Below the pieces are notes generated by a model that worked only from the letters and a program-made list of their open reading frames with translations, was not told where the DNA came from and did no database searches. Shown here piece by piece: positions 1 to 51,521 of a stretch of DNA of 64,000 nt (position 1 is its first letter; each line of letters begins with the position of its first letter). The stretch is taken from positions 1 to 64,000 of IMG/VR virus record IMGVR_UViG_3300048672_001051; one strand, 5' to 3'. Position numbers and translations under genes: made by a program.

Positions 1-2
1 CT

Positions 3-2141: not shown

Positions 2142-2158
2142 TATGTTATGGACTTACT

Positions 2159-27991: not shown

Positions 27992-30010
27992 ATGGCAACT
28001 TATCCAGGTAATAAGATTGAAATCCTAGACGGGCAACTTCAACCAATCGCTACAATTCCTGAGGACACTGTACTAGTCATTGATCGAGCACTGTCAGGAC
28101 CAACTAACATTGTCTACTATGTAAGTGACTTAAAACAAGCCTCAATCATGTACGGTGCAGAATCACCTTTAATTCGTAAAGCTTCTCAAGCTTTTAATGC
28201 TGGTGCACGGAACGTGGCACTGTATCGCTATGGCGGTCAAGCTGCGCAAATTCTAAATCTGTTCGGTCAAGATACTAGCATCGAGACTACTGCGCAATCA
28301 GTTGTAGCTTCAGATAATCTTTATGTGTATATTGGCCCTGAGCCTAATAGCCCATCTGTAGATTGTATATTAGTTACTCGTGGTTCGAAACTGATCTACT
28401 CTGATACAGTATCAACACCCCTAACTTCTTCAGTTGTGACAGTGCAAGGTTTCTCTAAAACTGATAATAGCGTATATGTAGGTAGCTACTACACGCCAGT
28501 ACCTTTTAGTGAAGTTGCTGCAGAGGCTGGAACACTAACCAGTTTCACTGGAGTTATCGCCAGTAATACAGTAGCTCTTGGTGTCGGCTACGATGACACT
28601 AAAGTTTCTAGTTACAGTAAATTAGTTAAACTTAATGATGTACGTTTAGAGCCTACTGAGTACAGTATCGCTGGAACTACACTAACAGTGCCTAACGCAG
28701 TAGATGGTGATACTATAACATATAGCTATGTTACAAAGTACACATTTGCCGAAATTCTAGCTAAAGGTATCGAATACAGCGCCGGAACAGACTCGCTAGA
28801 TGCAGGATATCGTGAACAATACGAATTGCTAGATACCGCATTGCGTGACCTAGACTTAGTTTCTGCTAAAGCAATACTTGTAGGTGATCTTCATGGTGTT
28901 GCCAACGTCTTCACTGGGTTTGTAGTGCCACAAGTTGGCGGTGTCTACGCCGACCCAGACACTTATAACGCTTTGACATATTTGTCAATTTTAGAAGATG
29001 ACGACGGCGAGCTAGTCTATAAGTGGTCACCTGTTAAAAAAATCTATCGCGATGCTGTAGATCCTCAAGCAACCACTACTAACAGTAATGCCGCCGCTAT
29101 AAATGCTAATGGTGAGCCTATCGTTGTAGAGTCATATTCAGCTGTGGATTTCGTTCACCGCTTAGGCATGTGGGCTTACGAGCGAGCTGTAGACGGGTTG
29201 TTTCCAAATGTTATTGTAGGTGCTAAGGGTCCTGCTAACTTAAGTAAAGCTGCACTAAATACTTGGGTTGGTAAAGCGCCAGTTAAAGATCTTCAAGGTA
29301 ACATTATTGAGAATGGTACTGGTCTACTTGGCCACACCTTGGCAGTTGGTACTACACTATATGCTGGCGGTTATTACGCCACAGCTAATGGTTTTGTAGA
29401 TGGTGATGTCTTAGTAGACAGCGGCCAGTTCCCCGTAGACCTTGGTAAATACTTAAGTGTAGTACCATCACAAGTTACTTTGCTAACTACAGGTGTTCCA
29501 GTAATATCTGGTGCTGCGGCGTATGCTGGCTTGGTATCTACAGTAGCCCCAGGCGACTCTACAACTAACAAAGTACTGTCTAGTATTTACCTAGCTACAC
29601 CACTACGTAAGTCACAGCTAATGGCATTGCAAGATGCAGGTTATGTAGTATTTGAAGATAAACCTTTTAAAGGCGTTACAGTTGTTTCTGGCGAGTTAAT
29701 GACTCGTGAAAATTCTGACTACGACTATATCAGTACTTCAATAGCTATCGCTGAGACTGTTCGTGAATTGACAATTGTCACAGACCCGTTCATTGGCCGA
29801 GGTATTGACGATGTCTCTATGAGCGCGCTACATACAGCAGTGACATCAAAAATGTTGTTCTTGCAAAAACTTGGATATTTCCAAAGCTCGCAGATTCGTC
29901 TAGTGCAAACTGGACCGAACAATGTGACATTGTATTTCAAAATACGTGCTAAAGACGAGCTACGTGAAGTTCTATCACAGATTAAACTTACCCGCGATAA
30001 CTTAGCGTAA
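27992..30010 (+). CDS. Tail sheath protein
   Basis: N-terminal YPGNKIEILDG; C-terminal sheath domain (LQDAGYVVF, PFIGRG, ELREV); size and position. Confidence 0.88.
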   Translation: MATYPGNKIEILDGQLQPIATIPEDTVLVIDRALSGPTNIVYYVSDLKQASIMYGAESPLIRKASQAFNAGARNVALYRYGGQAAQILNLFGQDTSIETTAQSVVASDNLYVYIGPEPNSPSVDCILVTRGSKLIYSDTVSTPLTSSVVTVQGFSKTDNSVYVGSYYTPVPFSEVAAEAGTLTSFTGVIASNTVALGVGYDDTKVSSYSKLVKLNDVRLEPTEYSIAGTTLTVPNAVDGDTITYSYVTKYTFAEILAKGIEYSAGTDSLDAGYREQYELLDTALRDLDLVSAKAILVGDLHGVANVFTGFVVPQVGGVYADPDTYNALTYLSILEDDDGELVYKWSPVKKIYRDAVDPQATTTNSNAAAINANGEPIVVESYSAVDFVHRLGMWAYERAVDGLFPNVIVGAKGPANLSKAALNTWVGKAPVKDLQGNIIENGTGLLGHTLAVGTTLYAGGYYATANGFVDGDVLVDSGQFPVDLGKYLSVVPSQVTLLTTGVPVISGAAAYAGLVSTVAPGDSTTNKVLSSIYLATPLRKSQLMALQDAGYVVFEDKPFKGVTVVSGELMTRENSDYDYISTSIAIAETVRELTIVTDPFIGRGIDDVSMSALHTAVTSKMLFLQKLGYFQSSQIRLVQTGPNNVTLYFKIRAKDELREVLSQIKLTRDNLA

Positions 30011-30020
30011 GTTTAGACAC

Positions 30021-30046
30021 TGTCGGTGCCTACACAGGCACCGACA
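30021..30046 (+). promoter_or_regulatory. GC-rich intergenic hairpin between sheath and tube genes
   Basis: tgtcggtgcct-acac-aggcaccgaca: perfect 11-bp stem, no adjacent U-tract. Confidence 0.7.
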
Positions 30047-30070
30047 ATAATATTTAAAAAGGAAAATAAC

Positions 30071-36979: not shown

Positions 36980-36981
36980 AT

Positions 36982-39900
36982 ATGAAACTAGACAGAGAAT
37001 TATTACTTACAGCTATTGGTGGCTTAACAGGCGCAGCAGCTGTAGACAGCGAAGGTGACTTCTTTGCAGCCCCTGTAGGGGCTGCAATAGGAGCTACAGC
37101 TGCAAATTATCTTGACATCAAGACGATTGACCCTGGTCGCTTAATACAAAATAATCGCACATTGCAGTTAAGCCAAGATAAGCGACTAACCAGAGCTGAG
37201 CAGTTAAGAGAGTCTTTGACTGAATTGTATGGTGCTGGCGGAAATACTCCAGTGCATCAGTATGCTAGTCAAGTTTTAAGTAATTCTTCTGCAACTGAGT
37301 ATGACTTATCAGTAGCACTGACTCAGTTAAAGTCTACAGGCGAGTTAAGCATGCTAACAAATCCGCAAGTTAAAAGTGAGCGCCTAAGTGTTACAAAAGT
37401 TGCGCCAAATGCTAGTGATTCTGTTAAATTAGCCGCATTTGAAAACAAACTGAAAAGCCTTGGGTACACTGGAAAAAATTTAACAGATAAGCTTGCTTTA
37501 TTTGAACCGTTAATTTCAAATTCTAAAGGTTTAATTATAAACGGAGACTCTATAACTCTAGGCGAGCAAGGCACTATACGACTTACTGACAGTTTAGGCG
37601 GGAATATAACCAACGGTTCTTATTACGCCACACAAAGACTTAATCCTTTTGCTAAAGCTGCCGCAGACGGAATGAATGTTAAAAGTATGGCGGAAGCTGT
37701 AGGTATAAATTTAATTGATGCTGCTAATTCTGATGTTTTAAGAGAGACGCTTGAGAGAGGTTTTAAACAAGGTTTAAGGCCGGATGACATGCAAGCTATG
37801 CTAGCACAGAGTGACTTAGGCTTAAGTTCTAAAGTACAAAACTTTGCAGAAACTGCTTACCAATATAGTGAAGATGGTACTAGCGCCCTAGTTAAAAATA
37901 GTGCTACAGCAAGATCAGAATTGTCTGAAATAGGTATAAATAAAAGAATTTTAAACGAGAGTGATTATGGCGTAGCTTTAAACATAGATACACGTACCAA
38001 TGGCCTAAACACTAAAAATCCTTTTAAGAGACTAAACACTAACTCTCCAGATGGTGTTAGGATATCTGACTACCTGAAGACAAGAAACTATTTAACTGCG
38101 CAGAATGGTGGCTTTATACAAGAGGGTGTTAAGACTGATAAGTACACTGTAATGTCAACAGCAAAGCCTAAGCCTCTGGCTAACGCTATGGGTATGATTG
38201 AGCGTAATGCGTACACCACGGGGACTAGAGGCGATCTGCCGGGTATAAATAAAGCAAGCTTGCCTGCCGGTGTTAATGCAACAGCTGACAGTGAAGTTTT
38301 GACTGCTATGTCAAAACTTGGACTGATGCCTGAGGAGTTTAGAGGTTCAGTCCCACTTAAACGTATTACCGTCGATGCTGAGCAATTTAATGCAGTAGCA
38401 GACCGTTTAGGACTACCTGCAGATGTTAGGCTAGGAGATGGCTCTGCATTGGGCAGTAGAACGCTATTAAATCAGTTTGAACATAAAGAAACTCAGCGTT
38501 TTATCATACCTAAAAATTCAAAAGGTGAGTACGCAGTAAGCTCTGCTGTTCAGACGTTCATTGACAGCAAACTGTCAGAGGGTGTAGGTTTTACAGGTTT
38601 AATGACCATACCTAACTTAGATGAAAGATCTAAAGATTTAGAAAGAATTAAGAAACTGGAGGTTGGTTATACTCCAGAAGATATTGCTGTCTTAAAAACA
38701 AATGTTGAGAATTCTCAACAAGCTCGTAAAAAAGTTAAAGATTTATTTGTAAACGGCTTACCAAAAACAATTAGCGCAGAAGAATCTGAGTTTATAAAAA
38801 ATGCGCCAATAGCTATAGCTTTTGACCAAGAAAAATTTAACGCTACAGTTAGAAGCAGATTTAGTGGCCAAGGGACGATCACTCCAGATATACTGGACAC
38901 CTTAGAGCAACACTTACGAAAAGGTGTTGCTCTGCCAGACTTAGGACTGCAAGGAAAGGGTGCTAGAAAATTAAGACAAGCTATTGCAGAATATAAACAA
39001 GACTCCGATTTAACAAATTTAAAAAATTATCATAAATCGAAGATAATGTCTAATGTGGATTATAATGATGCTTCTGCAGTTTTAAAAGGAGCTGAGAATG
39101 GAACTCTGCCGCAAGTTACAACTGAACAGTTAGCGAAAGCTAAGCAGCAGGTGCAAAACTATTATGCTAGAATGCTTCAACTTACATCGCGTAAATCTGA
39201 TGTGCAGCATAAAGAATATTCAACTGGCATGTATAACAAACTCACAGCTATTATGGGTGAAGATGTTGTCGACACATCTAAGGTTATGGAATTATTCCAA
39301 GAGCATAACAGAGTTGCTGCGGTTCAGCCACTAGCTAATCACGAGGTTTTAGGTTTAGACGCTAAAGGCTCGCCTATAAAAGTATCGACTGAGTTTAATA
39401 AATGGAGATTCACTGGAGCTAGAGAAGTAACTGACGACTTCGGAGTTACAAGCCTAGAACTTAACTTAGAAGGCTATAGCCGAGTAGGGTCCCAAGCTAG
39501 GGTAAAATCTTTTGGGGTTAGTTCTAAACAAGCCGTAGGCATGCTCAACCAAGATATGTTTGACGTAGCTTATGCAGTGGCTGATCAATTAGAGCGTGGT
39601 CTAATTCCAGCAGAGGGCACGCTAGTTGATCCGCAAGCTTTGACTACTGATGAGAAATTAATACGTCTACTTAGCGGATTCCCCGTACCTCCTGACAAGA
39701 CAGATGGAGAGTTGTTAGGCGAGTCAATTTTAGACAGGACAACAAAGTACAATCTGATGGTCGGTAAAAATACAAGTATTATTGTAGATGCTAGTGATAC
39801 TCAAGCTTCACTTGTTAAGACACTACAAAATGATTTGAAAGCTGGTACCCTGACAACTGGCATAAACAAAGGTTTAAATGAAGCTGCTATTAGTAGTGTT

Positions 39901-42474
39901 GCTAGCCAGACATTTGATAGTAGTTCAGCTGCCAGATTAGTCTCAGCACTATCTCAAAATAAAGATGGGGCTGGCGTACTGCACTCTGCCTATTACGATG
40001 CAGCAAGAGTCGCTTATAATAGTGGTAAGTACAATACAACTGCCGGAGCTTCTTCAAGAATGTTAGACTTTTATACAAACATTGGATTTAGTCCGGTTGG
40101 TCATGCGAACGGTGAAGCTAGCTTAGCAGCATTTGGTCAAGCATATCATGAACATGTGGGTAAATATTTTAACGGGTCTGCTGGATTTAACTCAGTTGAT
40201 ATGTTTAATAACCCTGCGATACAGTCTTTTTTTAATGCAACTAATGAAACTTACCATTGGAGTAGTCTTGACAGTCGAGCTACCTACACATACGGTGCAA
40301 GATCAGGCGATAGAGGTATGTCTTGGAATGCTCAGAAAAATTTAATAAACTCTGGCTATGCACCAGAGGTGTTAGACTTATTTGGCACGCATGACGCAAA
40401 TGCTGTCTACGATTTAAAAGCTTTTAGCAACACTATGAAAAAATCTGACTCAACTATAAATAGTTTTATTGCAGATTTACCTCAAGGTAAATTTACAGAG
40501 CTAATGCAAGACTTACGCGCAGCTAAACATGAAGACTATGCAGATATTTTTACTAAACATGGCGCAAACCGCGAGCTTGTGCAAGGAGACTTTATAAGTT
40601 ACGCGCTACCCGCAAACGAGTTTGGAATTGAAACTTTACCACTTTATAAGCAGTCTACTTATCGAGTTGGAACGTATGTAACTCCAGAAGGTCAAGAGAT
40701 GCGTAAAAACTTATCTACGTTACCTTTACAAATAATTCGCGCTAGTGAAGCAGCAGCTAGAGACCCTAGCGAGCTTATGCGTGAGAGACATCTTAAAGTT
40801 TATCAAGACTTGCTGACAGAGTATACTTCGGAAATATCGAACACTATTCAAAATTCTAGCGGCAATATTCTTAAAGAGTCTACTAAACGTTATGTTGAAA
40901 ATTCTTCATACTCTATTGTTGCGCCAGCAGAAGGTCATATAAAAGACCTTGCAATTGAATATAACTTAACTGGCAAAGGTCTGCCAACAGTAGGTGTAAG
41001 TGAGGAAGGTGCTGTAGAGCGTTTAAGACTTTTTGGAGTAGACACTGAGCACAAAGATTTTAACCTTGAAAATCATATGGACGCAGATGGCAGATTGTTG
41101 GACGCAGATGGTAACAAAGTGTTTTCGATACAATCTAGAGAACCAGCTTTCTCGACAAACTCTACAAGACTAGTAAATTACACTGTCATACCAGATGCAG
41201 AAACTGCAACTAAAAATACTGTATTCCACAGTGCAGCTGACACTCATTATTCTAAATTAATGTTTGGAGACTTTGACTTTGACCACGTATTTGAATATTT
41301 TCCAAAAAGAAACTTAAGTGCAGAAGAGTACGCTAACATATTAGCTATAGGTGAGAATCAAGCTAAACTTAGTAGAAGTTCAATCGAGTTGGCTCAACAC
41401 TTAGGTGTTAAAGGGTCAGCAAAAGATATGAAAAGCTTATCAGACTTTTTAGACGAAGCGTCTAAGTCAGGGGCCACTGGTACAGAACTAAATACTGTTG
41501 CAGCAGAATTGTATGCTCAGCACTTAGAGGGTTCTGCTGTGAAAGCTGGTCAACGTAAATCGTTGACACCAACTATAACAAATTTTGCAAACTCTATATT
41601 TAAGTCTGTTGAAAAAGCATCAAGTCCTGGCACTCAATTGTTTAACGACCAAGCCACTTTAATGCACTATTTAGTCGAAAATATGATTAAGTCGCAGCAC
41701 ACTAAAACTGGTGCCCAAAATAACTCTGTAAGTGAAGTGGAGAAATTAGTAAGTGCTCGTGAGAAGTTTTTAAAAAATCCTTCTGCGTATGGTGCGCAAT
41801 ATACAGATGCATTAGATCAGCTTTTACATTCTTTCAGTGGTGATATGAATGACAGTTTAAAAGCACGGGTGACTTCAGCAGTAGATGGCATTAAGCAAGC
41901 GGAGATGATACATGCACCGAGTTTAGCTGGCAGTGTGCAACTACCAACAGATTTTGGTAGAGCAGTTGCAGCAACTGCTGGAGAGTTTAGCGACATAGTT
42001 GAAAAACTAGATGATTTTGTACATCACGCTAAAATTTTACCAGTAGACGAAGGCGCTGTAAATATTGCTAGAACTGCCAGTTTCGGGTATGATGAGATCA
42101 TGTCGAACATTAAAACAAATGTTGCTAATAATAAAGTAGTCTTGGCGTTAGCTGCCGCTGGTCTTGTAGGTACAAGTATAATTACTCAAAAGTCACCAGA
42201 CTTTAAGACTAACACTAAAGCAACAGCTAACCCGTCTTCAATGATGATGGCACCTTCTAAACAAACATATAAAGATAGGAAGGAGCAAGACACATTAAAC
42301 GGTTTCAACTACCAAACACAATCTAACTACTTAACTAATAAAGACTTTGTAAAACAAGCTGTTTCTGTTCAAGGGCAGTACACTAAAGCAAAATCTGAAT
42401 TAGATAATTCAATTAAGAGAAGTGTATTTGGTAATAATATATCTAACGTAAGAATAGAAAGTTACTATGAGTGA
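36982..42474 (+). CDS. Putative single-chain two-barrel (DPBB) RNA polymerase, probably virion-associated
   Basis: SREP (R1386) and FGDFDFDH (D1430-D1434) resemble the beta-prime RxP...DxDxD active site; LGDGS (D486) and VKSFGVSSK (K842/K849) resemble beta motifs; hydrophobic N- and C-termini. Confidence 0.65.
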   Translation: MKLDRELLLTAIGGLTGAAAVDSEGDFFAAPVGAAIGATAANYLDIKTIDPGRLIQNNRTLQLSQDKRLTRAEQLRESLTELYGAGGNTPVHQYASQVLSNSSATEYDLSVALTQLKSTGELSMLTNPQVKSERLSVTKVAPNASDSVKLAAFENKLKSLGYTGKNLTDKLALFEPLISNSKGLIINGDSITLGEQGTIRLTDSLGGNITNGSYYATQRLNPFAKAAADGMNVKSMAEAVGINLIDAANSDVLRETLERGFKQGLRPDDMQAMLAQSDLGLSSKVQNFAETAYQYSEDGTSALVKNSATARSELSEIGINKRILNESDYGVALNIDTRTNGLNTKNPFKRLNTNSPDGVRISDYLKTRNYLTAQNGGFIQEGVKTDKYTVMSTAKPKPLANAMGMIERNAYTTGTRGDLPGINKASLPAGVNATADSEVLTAMSKLGLMPEEFRGSVPLKRITVDAEQFNAVADRLGLPADVRLGDGSALGSRTLLNQFEHKETQRFIIPKNSKGEYAVSSAVQTFIDSKLSEGVGFTGLMTIPNLDERSKDLERIKKLEVGYTPEDIAVLKTNVENSQQARKKVKDLFVNGLPKTISAEESEFIKNAPIAIAFDQEKFNATVRSRFSGQGTITPDILDTLEQHLRKGVALPDLGLQGKGARKLRQAIAEYKQDSDLTNLKNYHKSKIMSNVDYNDASAVLKGAENGTLPQVTTEQLAKAKQQVQNYYARMLQLTSRKSDVQHKEYSTGMYNKLTAIMGEDVVDTSKVMELFQEHNRVAAVQPLANHEVLGLDAKGSPIKVSTEFNKWRFTGAREVTDDFGVTSLELNLEGYSRVGSQARVKSFGVSSKQAVGMLNQDMFDVAYAVADQLERGLIPAEGTLVDPQALTTDEKLIRLLSGFPVPPDKTDGELLGESILDRTTKYNLMVGKNTSIIVDASDTQASLVKTLQNDLKAGTLTTGINKGLNEAAISSVASQTFDSSSAARLVSALSQNKDGAGVLHSAYYDAARVAYNSGKYNTTAGASSRMLDFYTNIGFSPVGHANGEASLAAFGQAYHEHVGKYFNGSAGFNSVDMFNNPAIQSFFNATNETYHWSSLDSRATYTYGARSGDRGMSWNAQKNLINSGYAPEVLDLFGTHDANAVYDLKAFSNTMKKSDSTINSFIADLPQGKFTELMQDLRAAKHEDYADIFTKHGANRELVQGDFISYALPANEFGIETLPLYKQSTYRVGTYVTPEGQEMRKNLSTLPLQIIRASEAAARDPSELMRERHLKVYQDLLTEYTSEISNTIQNSSGNILKESTKRYVENSSYSIVAPAEGHIKDLAIEYNLTGKGLPTVGVSEEGAVERLRLFGVDTEHKDFNLENHMDADGRLLDADGNKVFSIQSREPAFSTNSTRLVNYTVIPDAETATKNTVFHSAADTHYSKLMFGDFDFDHVFEYFPKRNLSAEEYANILAIGENQAKLSRSSIELAQHLGVKGSAKDMKSLSDFLDEASKSGATGTELNTVAAELYAQHLEGSAVKAGQRKSLTPTITNFANSIFKSVEKASSPGTQLFNDQATLMHYLVENMIKSQHTKTGAQNNSVSEVEKLVSAREKFLKNPSAYGAQYTDALDQLLHSFSGDMNDSLKARVTSAVDGIKQAEMIHAPSLAGSVQLPTDFGRAVAATAGEFSDIVEKLDDFVHHAKILPVDEGAVNIARTASFGYDEIMSNIKTNVANNKVVLALAAAGLVGTSIITQKSPDFKTNTKATANPSSMMMAPSKQTYKDRKEQDTLNGFNYQTQSNYLTNKDFVKQAVSVQGQYTKAKSELDNSIKRSVFGNNISNVRIESYYE

Positions 42475-45400
42475 TACAATAAATACATCATATAGCCAAG
42501 AACCTGGTGAAATTTTAGAAATAAATGATATAAATTTGGAGGTTCTTCCGAGTGATATCGCTATGTATGCTGATAACGCAATATATGAAGACGTATTTAT
42601 TCGTTCAAATGGTGCGTTTGCATTTAGGTCAAAACATTCACACTCTAAAATAATTTTAACTCTCCCGATCCCGCTTATTGCGGGTTCGGGCAAGTACAGT
42701 GCACTAGAAAAAAGTGCGCACGATAATGGCATCCGTTTAATAAATGAATTAAATAGCTACCCTTTTTGTTTTGTTAAATCATCACGTATTAGCTCGTACA
42801 TCGGTACATCAATTGCCAGCGAATATTTAGTATTTGGTGTGGATGAACTTCGATTAGTTATGGACTTAAATGTGCCTAATATCTTGTTTGCTGAAATAAC
42901 ATTACTCTATCATGATCATACAAATTATACTTCAAGTTTTTTATTCAGAGAAGATTTTGACACAGAGTCTGAGAGTGGCGCTGCAGTGTCTAGACCTGCA
43001 GATTCGAAACTATTTGTGCAGTACATGGACGCGCTACAAAACTCTAATAAAGCGTTTAATTACAATCAATTTATATCTGAAGTTAAAACAACTGTAAAAA
43101 ATTACGGTGAAGAGTCGACTTTAGGTCTTGTTAACCTGCTGACACCGTACTTTTTCGATAAAGACGATCCAAGTCTTAAACTAGGCGATGGTGAAGTTTA
43201 TGAAGAATTTAGCCTGTCTTCTGCAAACCTTGCAGAGCATGTCTTATCTACATCAATACTGCAAACTGCCAACGGAGATGATGAGTCGGCTACAATACGG
43301 CCATCGACTAAAAAAGAAAATGGTTCAAAAATAGTTGCTGCATATCGTGGCGACGTGCAGTTATTTAGTAATATTAACGTAGTAAATGCAGTAATATGTT
43401 CTCGTAAAAATTCATTTGCAAAGCAGTTTATTGGCAGTCACCAACACCCATGCTTACAGTATATCGGGAGATATCCTGCAAGAGTTGAGATTAAAACAAT
43501 GTTTAACTCTATGAACTCTTATAAGATGAATGTTGAGTCTGTTACGGCAATGTTTAAAACACTGTTAAACAAGATTGACAGTAATAACATGACGTTCCCA
43601 GAAGCTAACGCATACAATCACATGAAAGTACGATCGCTGCCTACAAGTTTGCTGCTAATTGAAAATATCATGCCAGATCAATGCACCATAAGCGCATCAT
43701 CAGATAACAAAGATATAGATGTTATAGATTGTACTTTTATAGAAAGTTCTTTAAAAGAATTTATAGATCCAAAAGAAGTTAGTGTAAAAGACTTAATAAA
43801 AGTTGCATCCGGTGCAGATACTTATAAAATAATTGCTGAGTACATAAAAGTCCTAGCTAACGCTAAAGATTTTAATACTGCAACCCACTCGACTTTGGTA
43901 AGATCTTTGTATGTAATTTACGACTACTTGCGAGAAGAAAACTCTGCATCACAATATAAAGTTCAGTATAGTAAAGATTTGGATAGCACTGCACTAAATA
44001 ACTATAAAATGAAGTCGGACAAAGAGGCTCGAGCGATAGCGACGGGTAGAGCCCAATTAAGTTTAGTTGCAGATATAAAAGATCCTATAGCATCAGCTAA
44101 TAATATTAAAAATAGTTTACAATCTTTAAGTATTTATCTGATTCCGAAGCTAAACAACCGCAAAGTTTTAGCGACTAATGAGGCAACAAACCTTATGAAA
44201 GTCTCTGACGATTTCATTGTCACTGACAAATCTGGAGCAAAAGTCGACGCATCTCTTCGTGATATATATAGCTTTAATGGAACTGCTGAATCAGCTTTAG
44301 ATAGTTTTGCTCTAGACCTAGGTGCATTATATAATGTTGGTGATAGTGTAGCTAAACAAATGACTACGCTAGGAACATCAGATACAGTAGCTAAAAATTT
44401 GAATGCACAGTTTATATCGTCATTCACAGGTGAAAACTACAAAGATTTGTCTTTAGATTTATTGTATAGCGATGTAGAGAACCGCCGTAAATTAACACCG
44501 TTTTTCTTCTTAGTGTGCAGACCACATTTTAGTAGAGAAGAGATGTATACAGCATTTAAACTTTTAGACAATGAAACTATAAATCAAATACAAGATAAGA
44601 TAAATTTACAAGTAACTCGAGAGTATGGATTAAGTGCCGCAACAGATTTAGGTACTAAATTTCTAAAAATGGGTGAGTATAGTTATAAGCCAGGGTCTGA
44701 GACTCAGTTGAACGGCTCTGGAACTACTAAGTATTTTGCTAGCGCAGAAACTAATGATAAGTACGATGCTTTAATTACAAAGTATGCAGACATGTATGGC
44801 TTAGAACCATCTCTTGTGAAAGCGGTAATTGAAACAGAGTCTCATTTTAATCCAAACATAGTTTCACCATCTAATGCAAAAGGCTTGATGCAACTTATTG
44901 ACACAACTTTTGCAGCTCAAAAAGTTGGTAGTAATCCTTTTGACCCTGAGCAGAACATTAATGCTGGCTGCAAGTATTTAAGTGAAGTAATTAAGAAAGC
45001 TAATGGCAATGTTAAAAATGGTTTAAGTTTTTATCACAGCGGACCTGCGGCGGATTTAAATAACTTAGGCCCTGCTGGAAGAGCTTACGCGCCAACTGTG
45101 TTTGAAAATCAAAAGAAATATTCAAAGTCACTGACAAATTCGACAACACCTAATAGACTTAAGCCGGATCAAAATGTAGCTAATCCGTTCCTAGGTACAT
45201 CTAATGGATTTACAAGCAATACGCAACCAATTATCAACGCGTCGGCATACAGAGATGCGTCAGAATTTAAAGTTGATAGTGTAGTTGACGGAGATACATT
45301 TGATGCTACAAGGCAACTTGACGGTAAAAGTCTAAGAGTTAGAATAAAACTTTTAGATACGCCTGAATCTGTAGGTATCTTTAACGGCACTTCTTTGCAA

Positions 45401-48400
45401 GCTCAGTGGTATGGCGCAGAAGCTAAACAAAAGCTCCGCAGTTTATTACCAGTTGGAAGTATAGTTAAGATAACTGGACTTGAAACAGACACAACATATA
45501 GCGAGAGAACTCTCGGCGTAGTAATTCGTGCTGATAAGTTAGATGTAGCTTTAGAGATGATTAAGACTGGTCATGGCTTAACTACGTCTGGTGTAAACAC
45601 AGCTTATACTCAAGCGCAAGCTAAGGCTAAAGCAGACCAAGTTGGGATGTGGGCAGAGCCTGCTAGAGTAATGCCTCCAGCTCAATTTAGAGCAGCACGT
45701 AAAAAAGCCGCAGAAGAGAGTGGCAAGAAGGAACCAGAACCGATTGTGCGCGGCTCAGAAGAAACTAAAAAAGATAACTCCAACTTAAAGAATACTTATG
45801 CACCTTTGAAAAAATCTTCACCTGTCACAAGTCCATATGGTTGGAGAACTATATTTGGAAAACAGCAATTCCATTACGGAGTAGACTTTGGCGTACCTAT
45901 AGGTACTCAAGTAGTTTCTGCTGCTTCTGGTACCGTGTCTAGAGTTTTTTCACAAGCTAGTGGTGGAGGTCTAATTGTAGAAGTTGCGCACGATGCTAGA
46001 GGATTTGTTACGCAGTATATGCATCTGAGCAAGGCTCTTGTATCAGCAGGCCAACGAGTAAAAGCTGATGAAGTAATTGCATTGTCTGGCAATAGTGGTG
46101 GACGAAGCACTGGGGCTCATTTACACTATGGTGTATCTTATAATAAAACGCGCATAAACCCATTTATGACCGTAACACTTTCAACGATACCTACAGACAC
46201 TCCACTAATAGCGGGAGATTACATCCACCCTGACGCCACTAAGAGTGCTGGACAGCGTGGCGGTGAGACTGATGGTGGTGCTGGCTTGAACTTGTACTTA
46301 GCAGGTGGCTCGAAAGAAGCTGATGTTAACGTGTTTTATGAGTTGCAAAAAAGTGAGTTTGGAGAATTGTACTCTGTATACAATGAAAAACTAATGCTTG
46401 AGAAACATTTAGAGCAGTTATTGTATAATTATAACTACACAATGGACACAGCATTTCCAGTAATAAAAGCTTATATAACTGTTGGTAATGAAAATGATGA
46501 GCTTATAGAAGGATCCACAATCCCAACTAGTCAGTATTTTGAAGTGAACGGACTTCAAAATTTTAAGATGCAATGTAACGACGATAACAACCCTGTTGAC
46601 GTTGCTATGTTTACATTAGCTAACCCATCTTTTTTACAAACAACAGGTGCAGTCGGTTTAACAAAGCAGTACGAAATTGACACAAGCCAACCGGGAACTG
46701 AGTATAATTTAAGCTTTATTGAAAATAAAATTAGATTACGGCCAGGCATGAAGTTTCACATAAGAGCTGGCTATGGTAATAACCCTAACAACTTAAAACC
46801 AATATTCAATGGAATGATTACAGATATTTCATCACCTATGAGTATGACTTTAAATATTGTCGCTGAAAGTTTTTCAAGAGAGTTGTTGTATACTGAAATG
46901 TCTTCTGATCAACCTAGAGACTTAACTGGAAACGATAACGGCTCAACCGGATATCTTTTAGGGCAGTCTATGTTGCAAGAAAGCATAACCCACTTTGGGA
47001 AGTCTTTTAGTGCACTTCGACGTATAACAAAAGTGTTAAACCCATTTAATGGAACGTCCACATATGACGGCGAAGTTCGAGATCCTGAAGCTAAAGCTAT
47101 GTTGGCGCCACTTAGCCCTACATCGTATATACCGCCAATGCTTACCATATTTAGTGGTTCTGGTTTTAGACAACGACGATTTACAAACTTGTACTCAGCT
47201 GACATAGAGAAAGTTCACGACGAGTTTGAAACTGGTATTATTAACAGCATCTCAAGGTCAATTGATTGGACTAGAAAAAGTAGTTATGGGTATTTTGTAT
47301 ATGGAACAACTCCGTGGCAAATTGTTAAGGAGATGGAACATAGACATCCAGGCACATTAGCCAAACCTCTATTGTATGAAGACCGGATGACAATGTTTTA
47401 CGGTACAAAAGAGCAATTATACGTGGCTAGAGATTTGAATCCTGCATATATGGCTCAGATTTCTTTAAAAACAACTTTACAAAAATTATCAGCATTAGCT
47501 CCAGAGGCGTCCGACGCTTTAGCGAAGAACATTGATTATGCGGAAGAACGTCCTAAGCGCTTAGAGCCAGCTACAGGCTTCCATATGCTCAGCACAAAGA
47601 CAAATATAATATCTAACGGTCTGGGTATATCTAATAAGTATAAAACGAGGATTAACAGTATATATAGCAAATCTGTCTCGGACTTTAAGAAAATTGATGG
47701 CGAGAATCCTGCAGAGGTAGTTCAAATAGATGACAACTTAAATCCTTGGGAAGTTCGTGATAAAACTATCGCTATGGGTGGTTGTAATAGCAGGTATATG
47801 GCTTGGCTGTATGGCACTCAAGAGTTAAAATCTGAGTGTGAAACAATGTATGGCGGTAAGATAGTACTAGTTGGCGACCCGACTATAAAAGCTGGCGACT
47901 ATGCTTTTATATACGATAACGACCGTAACATGGCAGGTATTATAAAAGTACGTGAATGCCAACACAATTTCAATATGGAGTCTGGGTTTACAACTGAGAT
48001 AGTTCCAGGACAGTATGTCGAGTGTGCAAATTTTGTTTGGTCTTTATTTTTCTTAAAGCTAGGCTTTATGTGTAAAATGACTTCAATTAAATTAGAGTTA
48101 TCTCAAGTAGATACTTTAACAACCGCGTCTATTGCACAAGAACTTGATTACTACTATAATTATATATACGAGAAAAATACGAGCATGTCTGATGCAGCTA
48201 TAGCTGCAATACCAGTAGCTGCCTACACAACATTAGGCACATTCTTAGCTTACTCCGCTATTTATACAAATGGTAAGAGCAACTTTGTAAAAGCTATGCT
48301 GATAAATGGTGCAGATTTAGCAACTAGCGTGGCTAAGAAAGGCTATGCAAAACTAGCCACTGTTCAGTTTAAAAACGGATTTTCACTTGGAAAATATTTA

Positions 48401-48931
48401 GCAGGTGGTTCTAGTACAGCTGTAAAGCAAACAAAGATACTTGCCCGCATGTACCAGCAAGTTAATGGTGTTGGTAAGATAACAAAAACAGCAATTAAAA
48501 TAGCTGGTTATAAGTTATATGTGCCATTTAAGATACTTACTAATCCAGCACTACTAAGAGTTAGCACACGGCTACTAGGCTTAGCTGCCACCGGCTTGCG
48601 TGGCTTATTAGTAGTTGCAGCGTCTAACCCGATAGGCGCACTGATAACAATTATAGGTGAATTCTTATTACAAATTGTAACATCAACGATAGAGAAAAAT
48701 ATGCTGACACGGCAACCACTAATCTTCTTCCCAATAAGTTGTATGGGTAAACCATACGTGGGCGGTATGACTGGCGTTGTAGACAATACATATTTTGAAG
48801 GCTTAATGCTCAATATCAAGAGAAACTTAGTGCCTATTGAGAAGATGTTACAAGATACTCAAATACGGACACAGGGTACGCTGGAAAGTGATATTGCTGG
48901 ATATTTTAGGGATTTTTTAAAAAGTGATTAA
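42467..48931 (+). CDS. Baseplate hub / tail-associated lysin with SLT transglycosylase, thermonuclease and M23 peptidase domains
   Basis: IETES..GLMQL (SLT, about 44760-45120); VVDGDT..RIKLLDTPE (SNase, about 45270-45690); HYGVD..HLH (M23, about 45820-46165); hub-like LRPGMKFHIRAGYG and GDPTIKAGD. Confidence 0.85.
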   Translation: MSDTINTSYSQEPGEILEINDINLEVLPSDIAMYADNAIYEDVFIRSNGAFAFRSKHSHSKIILTLPIPLIAGSGKYSALEKSAHDNGIRLINELNSYPFCFVKSSRISSYIGTSIASEYLVFGVDELRLVMDLNVPNILFAEITLLYHDHTNYTSSFLFREDFDTESESGAAVSRPADSKLFVQYMDALQNSNKAFNYNQFISEVKTTVKNYGEESTLGLVNLLTPYFFDKDDPSLKLGDGEVYEEFSLSSANLAEHVLSTSILQTANGDDESATIRPSTKKENGSKIVAAYRGDVQLFSNINVVNAVICSRKNSFAKQFIGSHQHPCLQYIGRYPARVEIKTMFNSMNSYKMNVESVTAMFKTLLNKIDSNNMTFPEANAYNHMKVRSLPTSLLLIENIMPDQCTISASSDNKDIDVIDCTFIESSLKEFIDPKEVSVKDLIKVASGADTYKIIAEYIKVLANAKDFNTATHSTLVRSLYVIYDYLREENSASQYKVQYSKDLDSTALNNYKMKSDKEARAIATGRAQLSLVADIKDPIASANNIKNSLQSLSIYLIPKLNNRKVLATNEATNLMKVSDDFIVTDKSGAKVDASLRDIYSFNGTAESALDSFALDLGALYNVGDSVAKQMTTLGTSDTVAKNLNAQFISSFTGENYKDLSLDLLYSDVENRRKLTPFFFLVCRPHFSREEMYTAFKLLDNETINQIQDKINLQVTREYGLSAATDLGTKFLKMGEYSYKPGSETQLNGSGTTKYFASAETNDKYDALITKYADMYGLEPSLVKAVIETESHFNPNIVSPSNAKGLMQLIDTTFAAQKVGSNPFDPEQNINAGCKYLSEVIKKANGNVKNGLSFYHSGPAADLNNLGPAGRAYAPTVFENQKKYSKSLTNSTTPNRLKPDQNVANPFLGTSNGFTSNTQPIINASAYRDASEFKVDSVVDGDTFDATRQLDGKSLRVRIKLLDTPESVGIFNGTSLQAQWYGAEAKQKLRSLLPVGSIVKITGLETDTTYSERTLGVVIRADKLDVALEMIKTGHGLTTSGVNTAYTQAQAKAKADQVGMWAEPARVMPPAQFRAARKKAAEESGKKEPEPIVRGSEETKKDNSNLKNTYAPLKKSSPVTSPYGWRTIFGKQQFHYGVDFGVPIGTQVVSAASGTVSRVFSQASGGGLIVEVAHDARGFVTQYMHLSKALVSAGQRVKADEVIALSGNSGGRSTGAHLHYGVSYNKTRINPFMTVTLSTIPTDTPLIAGDYIHPDATKSAGQRGGETDGGAGLNLYLAGGSKEADVNVFYELQKSEFGELYSVYNEKLMLEKHLEQLLYNYNYTMDTAFPVIKAYITVGNENDELIEGSTIPTSQYFEVNGLQNFKMQCNDDNNPVDVAMFTLANPSFLQTTGAVGLTKQYEIDTSQPGTEYNLSFIENKIRLRPGMKFHIRAGYGNNPNNLKPIFNGMITDISSPMSMTLNIVAESFSRELLYTEMSSDQPRDLTGNDNGSTGYLLGQSMLQESITHFGKSFSALRRITKVLNPFNGTSTYDGEVRDPEAKAMLAPLSPTSYIPPMLTIFSGSGFRQRRFTNLYSADIEKVHDEFETGIINSISRSIDWTRKSSYGYFVYGTTPWQIVKEMEHRHPGTLAKPLLYEDRMTMFYGTKEQLYVARDLNPAYMAQISLKTTLQKLSALAPEASDALAKNIDYAEERPKRLEPATGFHMLSTKTNIISNGLGISNKYKTRINSIYSKSVSDFKKIDGENPAEVVQIDDNLNPWEVRDKTIAMGGCNSRYMAWLYGTQELKSECETMYGGKIVLVGDPTIKAGDYAFIYDNDRNMAGIIKVRECQHNFNMESGFTTEIVPGQYVECANFVWSLFFLKLGFMCKMTSIKLELSQVDTLTTASIAQELDYYYNYIYEKNTSMSDAAIAAIPVAAYTTLGTFLAYSAIYTNGKSNFVKAMLINGADLATSVAKKGYAKLATVQFKNGFSLGKYLAGGSSTAVKQTKILARMYQQVNGVGKITKTAIKIAGYKLYVPFKILTNPALLRVSTRLLGLAATGLRGLLVVAASNPIGALITIIGEFLLQIVTSTIEKNMLTRQPLIFFPISCMGKPYVGGMTGVVDNTYFEGLMLNIKRNLVPIEKMLQDTQIRTQGTLESDIAGYFRDFLKSD

Positions 48932-49628: not shown

Positions 49629-49940
49629 ATGAAAGTAATAAAAGAATCTGCGGATTCCTCAGCATTTTTAATGCTAGACGGTCCAGATGTAATAATGGCA
49701 TCTGGACCAAATTCAATCAGTGTGACTAGGGACGCTGGCAACTTTATAAACGGTCCATTGTCGATAGGTTCTGGGCTAGACTCAATTAAAATTGGAGGTA
49801 TATTTAGGCTAAATCCTCTTATGGCTACAGGCTTACCTTCAACAATGATAACACCAATACCAACATTAATAATTGATATACCATTAAAAGGCTTAGCATC
49901 GTTTAGCGCTGTAGCAGGCCTAGTGAGCAGCTTAATATGA
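49629..49940 (+). CDS. Small baseplate-region protein (possibly spike-related)
   Basis: Beta-strand-rich N-half, LPSTMITPIP; just upstream of the gp25-like gene. Confidence 0.45.
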   Translation: MKVIKESADSSAFLMLDGPDVIMASGPNSISVTRDAGNFINGPLSIGSGLDSIKIGGIFRLNPLMATGLPSTMITPIPTLIIDIPLKGLASFSAVAGLVSSLI

Positions 49941-50329
49941 ACTTATCTGAAATAGTTACAACTAGTATAAGCTTTGATTTAGACTGGACTTTTGATAACC
50001 AAGATATTCTGATCTTGACCGATCAGTCTGAAATTATAATTCAAGGTATAAAAGATAGGCTAAGTACTGACTATGGTGATTATGAATTAAATAGAAAGTA
50101 CGGGTTTAACAGTCAAGCTTATATTGGGAGACCGGTAGATGAACGCACTGCTGAAGATTTAGCTGCTGCTATGTCAAATGTACTGACATTTGACAAATTT
50201 TTATCAAAAACATCTTTTAGAATTTTATGGATTCTAGACAAACATTTAATAGTTTTTAGACTGATACTAACTGACGAATCAGCTATAACATTTACATATA
50301 ATTCCACCGAAGGTTTAACTTTTGAGTAA
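49937..50329 (+). CDS. Baseplate wedge / sheath initiator (gp25-like)
   Basis: IIQGIKDRLSTDYGDYELNRKYG...YIG pattern; 130 aa; precedes the J-like gene. Confidence 0.72.
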   Translation: MNLSEIVTTSISFDLDWTFDNQDILILTDQSEIIIQGIKDRLSTDYGDYELNRKYGFNSQAYIGRPVDERTAEDLAAAMSNVLTFDKFLSKTSFRILWILDKHLIVFRLILTDESAITFTYNSTEGLTFE

Positions 50330-51521
50330 TTTAACATTTCAAATATCAAAAAGTGAAATTCTTAGAAAAATTTCTAATAATTTAGGCGTAACTGATATAA
50401 CTAAATCGTCACAATTGTCTAACTTAGCCGATGGGTTATTAGATATAACACAAACAGCATTTGATCAGATTTCAGAAACGTTTCAAAATAATTTTATTGA
50501 AACTTGTGATGAACAAACACTGGACAAAATAGGATTAGAGGCAGGCCTTCCACGCTACATAAAGTCTAGACTACGCATATCACAATCTGACAGTGCTATA
50601 GAGCTGACTATAGACCCTGAAGATGTTCTCATAGAAGATAGCTTCACACTATTAAAGACAGGTGAATTGTTGACAGTTAATTCTAATGTAGTTATACGAA
50701 TAACATCTGACATAATAGTCACAACAGATAAGGTTGAAAAAACTAGAGTAATAATCGGTGGAATTATAAGTTCATATAATGAGTTGTCGCCAATTAGTTT
50801 GACTGCCGGTACTTCATTAAGCTTTACTCCAAATGTAACTATAAGACCTAACCTTGTAAAATATAATATAAATTTTTTAAAAAGTATTACAAGTACAGTT
50901 ATAGAAGAGTCCTACGAGGACTATAGAGCTAGGCTATTAGCATACTCGGCATCTCCAAAGTATGGTACAGAACTTGCAATAGATACATTAGTGGCTAATT
51001 ACCCATATGTTGATAGATATTACATAGACACATCTACATATCCAGTGAATATATATCTATTAAATCAGCAAATGTATTACACATCTAATAGCGATTACTT
51101 AATAAATAACTACGCAATAGCTGCGTTGTCTGACGAATTGAATATGATTGCAGCTCACAACAGTGTTTATAAAGTTTTAAAAGCTAAAAAAGTAAATCTT
51201 AAAATTATGATAGAGACGGAAGATATTAATCTTCAAGCTAAATTTATAGGCACGTCTTTTATAGACTTTTTATATCAATATAGAACTTTAGGGGAGACGT
51301 TATACATTGATGAGTTTTTAATAGAAGAGTATTTATCAAAGTACTACGATAGTAAACCGACATATAGTTTTCAAGTTTTTTACAGCTTTTCAGGCTTTTT
51401 AGTGACCACTGACGTAGCGGAAATTAGCCCAGAGTCTTACCCTTATATAGAAGAAGTCTATCATAGCAGTAACGAGATAGCTGGAATTATAGGCGATATA
51501 ACTACAAATGGAATTAACTAA
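50322..51521 (+). CDS. Baseplate J-like protein
   Basis: LDKIGLEAGLPR and EESYEDYRARL...GTELAI motifs. Confidence 0.78.
   Translation: MSNLTFQISKSEILRKISNNLGVTDITKSSQLSNLADGLLDITQTAFDQISETFQNNFIETCDEQTLDKIGLEAGLPRYIKSRLRISQSDSAIELTIDPEDVLIEDSFTLLKTGELLTVNSNVVIRITSDIIVTTDKVEKTRVIIGGIISSYNELSPISLTAGTSLSFTPNVTIRPNLVKYNINFLKSITSTVIEESYEDYRARLLAYSASPKYGTELAIDTLVANYPYVDRYYIDTSTYPVNIYLLNQQMYYTSNSDYLINNYAIAALSDELNMIAAHNSVYKVLKAKKVNLKIMIETEDINLQAKFIGTSFIDFLYQYRTLGETLYIDEFLIEEYLSKYYDSKPTYSFQVFYSFSGFLVTTDVAEISPESYPYIEEVYHSSNEIAGIIGDITTNGIN

What the first reader, a model, noticed from the sequence alone, without database searches (positions are those of the whole stretch)
42467..48931. Baseplate hub fusing lytic transglycosylase, thermonuclease and M23 peptidase
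Seen: three adjacent enzyme domains with intact-looking catalytic residues: SLT (IETES, GLMQL), SNase (DGDT, R-x4-DTPE, YSER) and M23 (HYGVD, HLH), inside a 2154-aa hub-like protein. Known: SLT and M23 are common tail lysins; SNase is a Ca-dependent DNA/RNA nuclease. Inference: a nuclease at the tail tip is unusual and might digest biofilm eDNA or be delivered into the cell.
Basis: partly seen in the sequence, partly recalled or inferred. Interest (0 to 1): 0.62.

Follow-up and report, generated by a model that had tools for sequence, protein, structure and literature searches.

The report
Phage tail hub carrying a nuclease
A giant freshwater phage's central tail-tip protein carries two cell-wall-cutting enzymes plus an intact staphylococcal-type nuclease, a combination that is common in its uncultured relatives but has apparently never been described or tested.

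Summary
ORF 42467-48931 (+) encodes a 2154-aa protein with three enzyme domains. Pfam scores each above threshold, and a confident AlphaFold model matches solved structures of each.

- **SLT:** aa 756-891, catalytic E791.
- **SNase:** aa 935-1066, with D941, D943, R959, D964, T965, E967 and R1014 matching S. aureus nuclease D19, D21, R35, D40, T41, E43 and R87.
- **M23:** aa 1110-1238, with H1136, D1140, H1186, H1218 and H1220.

Residues ~1300-1880 fold like Mu gp44, T4 gp27 and VgrG hubs. The gene sits between tape-measure-sized ORFs and baseplate wedge genes in a 229.7-kb freshwater jumbo myovirus.

The architecture is not unique. Acinetobacter phage ME3 gp37 has SNase+M23. Of 95 close metagenomic homologues, 83 keep an SNase-like domain in the same slot. 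The catalytic core is intact in 54, degenerate in 29 and absent in 12, with at least 9-10 independent losses. The glycosidase slot is swapped freely.

dN in the SNase domain equals that of the two lysins.

The domain is most likely an active, Ca-dependent, virion-borne nuclease working outside the cytoplasm. Its substrate is unknown. I found no literature describing it.

The parts
42467..48931 (+). Complete hub gene, 2154 aa (P0001). Its start overlaps the upstream ORF by 8 nt, and its end overlaps the downstream ORF by 8 nt.
   Evidence: The same overlapping gene layout occurs in relatives L004 and L005. phrog_8809 matches at E 3.5e-217.
42467..44686 (+). N-terminal region, aa 1-740. It is family-specific and its fold is unassigned. 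Its position hints at a tube-initiator, Dit-like or Mu gp43-like adaptor.
   Evidence: It is conserved across homologues (alignment A4). There is no Pfam or PDB profile hit. The Atlas gives only weak leads below 0.9.
44732..45139 (+). Lytic transglycosylase (SLT/GH23) domain, aa 756-891, with the catalytic Glu-Ser pair E791-S792.
   Evidence: Pfam PF01464 at E 5e-24. Structural match to MltF 5aa1 at Z 17.8, and to Slt70 and MltC. The ES motif is conserved in alignment A2.
45143..45250 (+). Disordered linker 1, aa 893-928.
   Evidence: pLDDT is below 50 in the model. dN is 0.40, against 0.16-0.18 in the flanking domains.
45269..45664 (+). Staphylococcal-nuclease (SNase) domain, aa 935-1066. It carries D941, D943, T944, R959, D964, T965, E967 and R1014, which correspond to SNase D19, D21, T22, R35, D40, T41, E43 and R87.
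   Evidence: Pfam PF00565 at 37.7 bits, above the cut-off of 21. The family profile A1 matches S. aureus thermonuclease at E 4e-24 over residues 16-144 of 149. Structural match to 1sta at Z 15.9. Catalytic columns were scored. It is the only SNase match in the 229.7-kb genome.
45794..46180 (+). M23 (LytM-type) zinc endopeptidase domain, aa 1110-1238, with H1136, D1140, H1186, H1218 and H1220.
   Evidence: Pfam PF01551 at E 1e-24. These residues are invariant or near-invariant in alignment A2. Structural match to 2gu1 at Z 18.9, rmsd 1.8 A. Foldseek matches ShyA, LytM and lysostaphin.
46370..48100 (+). Central baseplate hub domain of the gp27 / Mu gp44 / VgrG-base type, aa ~1302-1878.
   Evidence: AlphaFold2 model with pTM 0.71. 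Foldseek matches include AlgoCIS 7aef_q at E 7e-14, Mu gp44 (1wru and 9ki1_G, TMt ~0.6), T4 gp27 1k28_D, VgrG, PVC, AFP, the pyocin R2 hub and the phi812 hub. It is the most conserved part of the gene, with dN 0.05.
48164..48928 (+). C-terminal helical region, aa 1900-2154. It has hydrophobic segments at 1910-1928 and 2044-2076 and a conserved terminal motif (LTRQPL..FP....GKPYVGG). It may be a membrane-insertion or tube-plug element.
   Evidence: Hydropathy scan. Low-confidence helices are followed by a confident conserved C-terminus in the model. The motif is conserved in alignment A3.
36982..42474 (+). Upstream 1830-aa ORF with no family hit. It sits where the tape measure protein would be expected.
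   Evidence: The layout is syntenic with ME3 gp36 and 0305phi8-36 gp146, the latter annotated 'hypothetical tape measure protein'.
49937..51521 (+). Downstream baseplate wedge genes: a gp25/W-like ORF of 130 aa and a gp6/J-like ORF of 399 aa.
   Evidence: phrog_120 and phrog_43 for the first, phrog_6 for the second. A relative shows a weak Sheath_initiator Pfam hit.
27992..30010 (+). Tail sheath gene, which marks the contractile-tail module.
   Evidence: phrog_16991 at E 1e-64.

Best explanation
The gene encodes the central baseplate hub of a ~230-kb freshwater jumbo myovirus of the ME3 / 0305phi8-36 lineage.

**Shown**
- A gp27 / Mu gp44-type hub domain (aa ~1300-1880) is preceded by an enzyme cassette strung on flexible linkers: an SLT glycan-strand cutter, a staphylococcal-type nuclease and an M23 cross-link peptidase.
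- All three domains have complete catalytic residue sets.
- The order [glycosidase]-[SNase]-[M23]-[hub] is ancestral to a large family of uncultured phage hubs.
- The nuclease active site has been kept in about two thirds of these hubs over deep divergence.

**Inferred**
- On sheath contraction the hub is driven through the outer membrane.
- SLT and M23 together open the peptidoglycan locally.
- The SNase domain is a catalytically competent, Ca2+-dependent nuclease that travels on the virion and works outside the cytoplasm, where Ca2+ is available.
- Its most likely role is cutting DNA that obstructs the tail tip: matrix or cell-surface eDNA, or viscous DNA in lysates.
- Low cytoplasmic Ca2+ would keep it harmless during assembly.
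- The fold also has a second role that does not need catalysis (structural or binding), because lineages that lost the catalytic residues still keep the domain.

**My odds**
- Hub with three genuine enzyme folds: about 0.95.
- SNase domain enzymatically active in this phage: about 0.65.
- Extracytoplasmic DNA as the substrate: about 0.4.
For: **Domain identities**
- Pfam hits above gathering scores.
- The family profile matches S. aureus thermonuclease at E 4e-24 over the full fold.
- Structural Z-scores of 15.9-18.9 for each domain.

**Hub identity**
- Fold match to Mu gp44, gp27, VgrG and eCIS hubs.
- Synteny running sheath, tape-measure-sized ORFs, hub, wedge genes.

**Catalytic residues and selection**
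- D21, R35, D40, T41, E43 and R87 equivalents are all present in P0001.
- These are the invariant or near-invariant columns of the domain.
- 54 of 95 close homologues keep the core, and the intact state is deep in all major clades.
- dN is 0.164 in SNase, 0.181 in SLT and 0.164 in M23, against 0.40 in the linkers.

**Signs that nuclease function is selected for**
- ME3 gp37 keeps SNase+M23 at only ~31% overall identity.
- P0049 carries a second, intact SNase at its N-terminus while its central copy is degenerate.
- The hub domain is the only SNase in the genome.
Against: - No enzymatic or virion-proteomic data exist for this protein or for ME3 gp37.
- 29 of 95 homologues keep the domain with a destroyed active site, and 12 lack it. 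Degeneration or loss happened at least 9-10 times independently. Nuclease activity is therefore dispensable in many lineages, and the fold may be kept for another reason.
- P0001 and P0003 have a 1-2-residue insertion in the Y85-R87 loop (Y-S-E-R in place of Y-G-R).
- dS is saturated, so the dN/dS ratios are only rough.
- It is unknown whether the cassette is exposed before contraction, and what DNA it would meet.
- The host is unknown, because the source is a freshwater metagenome.
Confidence: 0.5

Rival explanations
1. The SNase-like domain is mainly a structural or ligand-binding OB-fold spacer of the hub. It might position or regulate the adjacent M23 domain, or dock another baseplate part. 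Nuclease chemistry would then be irrelevant in this phage.
For: - 83 of 95 homologues keep the domain in the same slot, but 29 of them have lost the catalytic residues, for example 'CPYP' in place of 'DTPE' in P0035-P0041.
- The model matches Tudor-SN SN domains as well as it matches S. aureus nuclease (3bdl Z 16.6, 1sta Z 15.9). The SN fold therefore need not imply nuclease activity.
- The SNase-then-M23 order is fixed while the glycosidase slot is swapped.
Against: - P0001 has every catalytic and Ca-binding residue.
- Those columns are the most conserved of the domain across sequences only 25-40% identical.
- A purely structural OB fold would not be expected to keep D21, R35, E43 and R87.
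- P0049 carries a fresh intact SNase where its central copy is degenerate.
Confidence: 0.2
2. The nuclease works in the periplasm after penetration. There it would destroy DNA that is not protected by the phage's own conduit, such as transforming DNA or mis-injected DNA of superinfecting phages. It would act as a local exclusion device.
For: - The domain is tethered between two enzymes that act in the periplasm.
- Hub proteins travel with the tube tip (fold homology to gp27, Mu gp44 and VgrG).
- From established knowledge of the SNase family, periplasmic Ca2+ levels would permit activity.
Against: - Only a few copies arrive per infection, and they stay confined to one site.
- Competitor phages also shield their DNA inside their own conduits.
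- No data exist. The idea rests on inference alone.
Confidence: 0.12
3. The nuclease is an injected effector. It would reach the cytoplasm with the hub and tape-measure proteins and attack host DNA or RNA.
For: - The C-terminal region has hydrophobic helices that could insert into the inner membrane.
- From my own knowledge, related contractile machines such as T6SS and eCIS deliver nuclease effectors. This was not tested here.
Against: - The domain is covalently embedded mid-chain in a 2154-aa structural protein.
- From established knowledge, SNase-family enzymes need far more Ca2+ than the cytoplasm provides.
- A non-specific nuclease would endanger the incoming phage genome.
- The neighbouring domains act on peptidoglycan, not in the cytoplasm.
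Confidence: 0.08
4. The SNase fold has been repurposed to cut a phosphodiester-linked surface polymer that is not a nucleic acid, such as a teichoic-acid-like or phosphoglycan capsule.
For: - It sits in a cassette whose other members degrade envelope polymers.
- The enterococcal tail-lysin survey reports tail lysins that target teichoic acids (PMC10194240, listed).
Against: - To my knowledge, no SNase-family member is known to act on substrates other than nucleic acids.
- The residue set matches the nucleic-acid enzyme exactly.
Confidence: 0.05

Closest known systems
Acinetobacter phage vB_AbaM_ME3 gp37, annotated 'baseplate hub protein' in GenBank and 'peptidase' in RefSeq; PHROG 8809
   Same: - Same family: phrog_8809 at E 3.5e-217 and 30.7% identity over 76% of the protein.
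- Same gene neighbourhood.
- Same SNase-M23-hub order, with an intact SNase core.
   Different: - ME3 has no Pfam-recognisable SLT in the glycosidase slot.
- The proteins are only ~31% identical.
- The ME3 genome paper does not mention a nuclease or a hub, so the feature is undescribed there too.
Bacillus phage 0305phi8-36 gp147 baseplate hub, annotated as containing peptidoglycan-degrading domains
   Same: - Distant homologue of the hub region.
- Same position after the tape measure protein and before the P2 gpV-like and gpJ-like genes.
- It also fuses lysins to a hub.
   Different: Its lysins are NlpC/P60 and M23, placed at the C-terminus, and it has no SNase.
T4 gp27-gp5 cell-puncturing device, and the Mu gp44 and P2 gpD hubs
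   Same: - The hub domain has the same fold.
- From established knowledge, T4 gp5 likewise carries a peptidoglycan hydrolase (a lysozyme) at the tail tip.
   Different: - Here the enzymes are fused N-terminally to the hub itself.
- There are three of them, one being a nuclease.
- No Pfam hub family (such as Phage_GPD) is detected at the sequence level.
phi29 gp13 and other tail-tip or tape-measure lysins with glycosidase plus M23 domains
   Same: A two-enzyme peptidoglycan attack, glycosidase plus LytM-type peptidase, at a tail tip. phi29 gp13 (3csq) aligns across both domains at Z 10.7. The M23 domain also resembles tape-measure M23 PHROGs.
   Different: Those proteins have no nuclease domain between the two lysins and no gp27-like hub domain in the same chain.
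Staphylococcus aureus thermonuclease (Nuc, micrococcal nuclease)
   Same: Same fold and the complete catalytic and Ca-binding residue set.
   Different: - Sequence identity is only about 20%.
- Here it is an internal domain of a virion protein rather than a secreted stand-alone enzyme.
- There is a small insertion in the Y85-R87 loop.
- Activity is untested.
Evolved VgrG spikes of type VI secretion systems, i.e. a hub fused to effector domains
   Same: - The hub fold is shared (VgrG1 and VgrG hits).
- Some family members carry the T6SS_VgrG3-like_C muramidase domain in the glycosidase slot.
- The logic is the same: enzymes ride on the puncturing device.
   Different: - From established knowledge, VgrG effector domains are C-terminal toxins aimed at rival cells.
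- Here the enzymes are N-terminal to the hub and serve phage entry.
- This is a 'works like' comparison. The protein is not a member of that group.

Membership tests
SNase / thermonuclease (Pfam PF00565) | Sequence match above the curated Pfam threshold | tested here: met
   37.7 bits against a cut-off of 21, E 3e-9, aa 957-1063. The genome search gives 41.5 bits. The family profile matches S. aureus nuclease at E 4e-24.
SNase / thermonuclease (Pfam PF00565) | SNase OB-fold three-dimensional structure | tested here: met
   The AlphaFold2 model (pLDDT mostly above 90 in the domain) matches 1sta at Z 15.9, rmsd 2.5 A over 128 of 137 residues, and Tudor-SN 3bdl at Z 16.6.
SNase / thermonuclease (Pfam PF00565) | Ca2+ ligands (D21, D40, T41) and catalytic residues (R35, E43, R87) | tested here: met
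   The equivalents are D943, D964, T965, R959, E967 and R1014. These columns are invariant or near-invariant in the family alignments.
SNase / thermonuclease (Pfam PF00565) | Ca2+-dependent hydrolysis of DNA and RNA | not testable with these tools
   This needs a biochemical assay of the expressed domain or of virions.
SLT lytic transglycosylase (Pfam PF01464, GH23) | Pfam match, goose-lysozyme-like fold, and the catalytic Glu-Ser motif | tested here: met
   E 5e-24. E791-S792 lies in 'IETES', and the ES motif is conserved in alignment A2. Structural matches are MltF at Z 17.8, and Slt70 and MltC.
Peptidase M23 (Pfam PF01551, LytM type) | Pfam match, the HxxxD and HxH zinc/catalytic motifs, and the LytM fold | tested here: met
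   E 1e-24. H1136, D1140, H1218 and H1220 are invariant and H1186 is near-invariant. Structural match to 2gu1 at Z 18.9, rmsd 1.8 A. Foldseek matches ShyA, LytM and lysostaphin.
Central baseplate hub (T4 gp27 / Mu gp44 / P2 gpD / VgrG base) | gp27-like multi-domain hub fold | tested here: met
   Foldseek E values run from 7e-14 to 1e-7 against hubs of AlgoCIS, PVC, AFP, diffocin, Mu (1wru, TMt 0.63), T4 gp27, VgrG, pyocin R2 and phi812.
Central baseplate hub (T4 gp27 / Mu gp44 / P2 gpD / VgrG base) | Sequence-level membership in a curated hub family such as Phage_GPD | tested here: not met
   No Pfam family other than SLT, SNase and M23 is found at E up to 0.1. Homology is visible only at the fold level and through phrog_8809.
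Central baseplate hub (T4 gp27 / Mu gp44 / P2 gpD / VgrG base) | Gene position between the tape measure and the spike/wedge genes of a contractile-tail module | tested here: met
   The sheath gene is at 27992-30010 and giant ORFs lie upstream. gp25/W-like and gp6/J-like genes lie downstream. The layout is syntenic with ME3 and 0305phi8-36.
Central baseplate hub (T4 gp27 / Mu gp44 / P2 gpD / VgrG base) | Presence in the virion as a trimer at the tube tip | not testable with these tools
   This needs virion proteomics or cryo-EM. No complex prediction was run.
ME3 gp37-like hub family (PHROG 8809) | Full-length profile match | tested here: met
   E 3.5e-217, 725 bits. 94 further metagenomic homologues match the hub region at E below 1e-50.

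The most novel reading that the evidence does not exclude
Nucleic-acid hydrolysis would be a third, so far unrecognised class of virion-borne envelope-breaching activity, alongside polysaccharide depolymerases and peptidoglycan hydrolases. A large clade of uncultured jumbo myoviruses would carry an active Ca2+-dependent nuclease on the tail hub. It would cut through eDNA in matrices, on cell surfaces or in lysates, or destroy foreign DNA in the periplasm. Its repeated loss and re-acquisition would track host ecology.
Probability: 0.35. Interest if true: 0.7.

Novelty: new variant of a known kind. Interest (0 to 1): 0.5.

Why it matters
Tail-tip enzymes are understood as tools against polysaccharide and peptidoglycan barriers. 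A conserved, apparently active nuclease built into the puncturing device would add DNA to the list of barriers that phages cut.

This bears on three areas:
- how large phages move through eDNA-rich biofilms and lysates;
- the design of antibiofilm phages or enzymes;
- how modular 'enzyme cassettes' evolve on contractile injection machines.

The family offers a natural experiment, because intact, degenerate and absent states occur repeatedly. It also offers a cultivable test case in Acinetobacter phage ME3. If the domain proves inactive or purely structural, the finding reduces to an annotation improvement for a family now labelled 'unknown function' or 'peptidase'.

Tried and rejected
- **Megablast of the gene against 50,697 phage records:** no match. 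I used protein searches instead.
- **Single-sequence phmmer of the SNase region against the PDB:** no hit. A 33-sequence family profile then gave E 4e-24.
- **Foldseek on the three-domain model:** it listed only M23 hits. The wide VIA search was needed to see the SLT and SNase matches.
- **N-terminal 740 aa:** unassigned. There is no Pfam hit and no PDB profile hit even at E up to 10, and the Atlas gives only sub-0.9 leads to Dit-like, tube-initiator and DNA_circ_N families.
- **SNase-like segments near the C-termini of giant distant hubs (P0100-P0107):** my own HMM flagged them but Pfam did not confirm them. I dropped them as evidence for independent recruitment.
- **dN/dS:** synonymous sites are saturated (dS about 1.8-2, or undefined), so I use only the dN comparison between domains.
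- **Cluster look-up for host or taxonomy hints:** it gave only one Campylobacterota MAG label.
- **0305phi8-36 genome paper (PMC2171028):** not held in the library.


Full report
**1. The observation**

The window is the first 64 kb of a 229,656-bp virus record that is about 98% complete and comes from a freshwater metagenome. ORF 42467-48931 (+) is one uninterrupted frame of 2154 aa. It overlaps both neighbouring ORFs by 8 nt, and two relatives share this layout.

Pfam recognises exactly three families, all above their curated thresholds:
- SLT, aa 769-867, E 5e-24.
- SNase, aa 957-1063, 37.7 bits against a cut-off of 21.
- Peptidase_M23, aa 1134-1232, E 1e-24.

**2. The three enzyme folds**

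An AlphaFold2 model of aa 740-1262 was built on 38 family sequences. It has a mean pLDDT of 83.7 and shows three compact domains separated by disordered linkers at aa 893-928 and 1089-1099.

Foldseek ranked only M23 matches such as ShyA, LytM and lysostaphin. The Foldseek-independent search recovered all three folds:
- M23 against 2gu1: Z 18.9, rmsd 1.8 A.
- SLT against MltF: Z 17.8.
- SNase against S. aureus nuclease 1sta: Z 15.9, rmsd 2.5 A over 128 of 137 residues.
- SNase against Tudor-SN: Z 16.6.

The SNase region alone finds nothing in the PDB by sequence. A profile of 33 hub SNase domains does match S. aureus thermonuclease, at E 4e-24 over residues 16-144 of 149. That alignment maps D941, D943, T944, R959, D964, T965, E967 and R1014 onto SNase D19, D21, T22, R35, D40, T41, E43 and R87. 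This is the complete Ca-binding and catalytic set. The only deviation is a one- to two-residue insertion before R1014.

The SLT catalytic pair E791-S792 is present. So are the M23 residues H1136, D1140, H1186, H1218 and H1220.

**3. The protein is a hub**

A model of aa 1260-2154 (pTM 0.71) matches the central hub or spike-base proteins of contractile injection systems, with Foldseek E from 7e-14 downwards. The matches are AlgoCIS, Anabaena CIS, PVC, AFP, diffocin, phage phi812, Mu gp44 (TMt about 0.6), T4 gp27, T6SS VgrG and pyocin R2.

Gene context agrees:
- The tail sheath gene is at 27992-30010.
- Two giant unassigned ORFs of 1311 and 1830 aa lie upstream.
- gp25/W-like and gp6/J-like wedge genes lie downstream.
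- The order is collinear with Acinetobacter jumbo phage ME3 and Bacillus phage 0305phi8-36, where the corresponding genes are annotated 'baseplate hub protein'.

No curated hub Pfam family is detected, so hub membership rests on fold and synteny.

Two regions remain poorly defined. The last ~250 aa are helical, with hydrophobic segments at 1910-1928 and 2044-2076 and a conserved terminal motif. The first 740 aa are conserved in the family but could not be assigned.

**4. How routine the architecture is**

ME3 gp37 is 30.7% identical and belongs to phrog_8809, which matches P0001 at E 3.5e-217. It also has SNase followed by M23. The 0305phi8-36 hub instead has NlpC/P60 and M23 at its C-terminus and no SNase.

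A word search with the hub region found 110 homologues, almost all from metagenomes. In the 95 close ones:
- Precomputed Pfam flags SNase in 56.
- An iterated family HMM finds an SNase-like domain in the same slot in 83.
- The catalytic core (D21, R35, D/E/N40, E43, R87) is intact in 54 and degenerate in 29.
- The domain is absent in 12.

On a hub-domain tree the intact state is deep in all three large clades. The label changes at least 9-10 times. A basal clade of shorter hubs carrying only SLT lacks both SNase and M23.

The slot upstream of SNase is swapped among SLT, VgrG3-like_C, Phage_lysozyme2, glucosaminidase, CHAP and VanY, while the SNase-M23-hub order stays fixed. One protein, P0049, has a degenerate central copy and a second, intact SNase at its N-terminus.

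**5. Constraint on the nuclease domain**

Against the closest relative (82% identical overall), the per-domain dN values are:
- SNase 0.164
- SLT 0.181
- M23 0.164
- linkers 0.40
- hub 0.05

Synonymous sites are saturated, so only this comparison is used. The nuclease domain is as constrained as the two lysins. The most conserved columns of the domain are the catalytic ones plus a few core residues.

**6. How unusual it is outside the family**

- Only ME3 among 50,697 deposited phage records matches the domain by tblastn.
- Other PHROGs with this fold (phrog_452, phrog_20876) are small stand-alone endonucleases in the DNA-metabolism category.
- The hub copy is the only SNase in this genome.
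- Full-text searches found no paper describing an SNase or thermonuclease in a phage tail, hub or tape measure.
- The single paper holding both 'thermonuclease' and 'baseplate' concerns a stand-alone prophage gene.
- The ME3 genome announcement mentions neither a nuclease nor the hub.

**7. Mechanism**

Shown:
- A hub protein carries three enzyme folds with intact active sites on flexible tethers.
- The nuclease module is ancestral, widely retained and under purifying selection.
- It is repeatedly inactivated while the fold is kept.

Inferred, by analogy with T4 gp5 and other tail-tip lysins:
- Contraction drives the hub through the outer membrane.
- SLT cuts the glycan strands and M23 cuts the peptide cross-links.

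For the nuclease, the family's known Ca2+ requirement argues for action outside the cytoplasm. It also offers a simple reason why the enzyme would be harmless during assembly.

I consider cutting obstructing DNA around the tail tip the most likely role. That DNA could be matrix or cell-surface eDNA, or DNA in lysates. The rivals are a periplasmic role against foreign DNA, a purely structural or regulatory OB fold, a cytoplasmic effector, and a phosphodiesterase acting on a polymer that is not a nucleic acid. The retained but inactivated copies show that the fold also has a role that does not need catalysis.

**8. Verdict**

The fusion is not a singular event. The nuclease-on-a-hub feature nevertheless appears undescribed and is directly testable in ME3. 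I rate it a new variant of a known kind (tail hubs with fused lysins), of moderate interest.

Noticed in passing
window 1-2141 (ORF 3-2141, open at the 5' end): This stretch has 51% GC against about 36% for the rest of the window. It encodes an Ala/Thr-rich 712-aa protein with an internal ~50-aa repeat (AI(A/S)YVATA..LPLTV..APAGANFVAFNLATDTAT..) and has no Pfam or PHROG hit. It may be a horizontally acquired fibre or receptor-binding protein.
   Followed up: partly
window 2096-4000: This 634-aa ORF carries YadA_head adhesin repeats (Pfam E 2e-20) and matches a PHROG labelled 'peptidase'. It looks like an adhesin-type tail fibre, and it lies upstream of the terminase, away from the baseplate genes.
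   Followed up: no
window 48164-48928 (hub aa 1900-2154): The hub ends in a helical region with hydrophobic segments (aa 1910-1928 and 2044-2076) and a strongly conserved terminal motif (LTRQPL..FP....GKPYVGG). This is tape-measure-like and may be a membrane-insertion or tube-plug element fused to a hub.
   Followed up: partly
window 33044-42474: Two consecutive giant ORFs of 1311 and 1830 aa lie directly upstream of the hub. Neither has a Pfam or PHROG hit. By position one of them should be the tape measure protein.
   Followed up: partly
window 30026-30754: The ORF immediately after the sheath gene matches phrog_9206, labelled 'major head protein' (E 1e-37). In ME3 the corresponding gene is a 'major structural protein' homologous to 0305phi8-36 tail-region genes. 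By position it is probably the tail tube, so the PHROG label looks misleading.
   Followed up: no
homologue P0049 (2961 aa, metagenomic): This hub homologue has two SNase domains. An intact one lies at the N-terminus (aa 72-163, Pfam E 4e-14). The central-slot copy has lost its catalytic residues. This suggests replacement rather than simple loss.
   Followed up: partly
hub homologues P0005, P0006, P0007, P0012 and others: Several phage hubs carry the T6SS_VgrG3-like_C muramidase domain (PF21277) in the glycosidase slot. This is a direct module link between phage hubs and evolved T6SS VgrG spikes.
   Followed up: no
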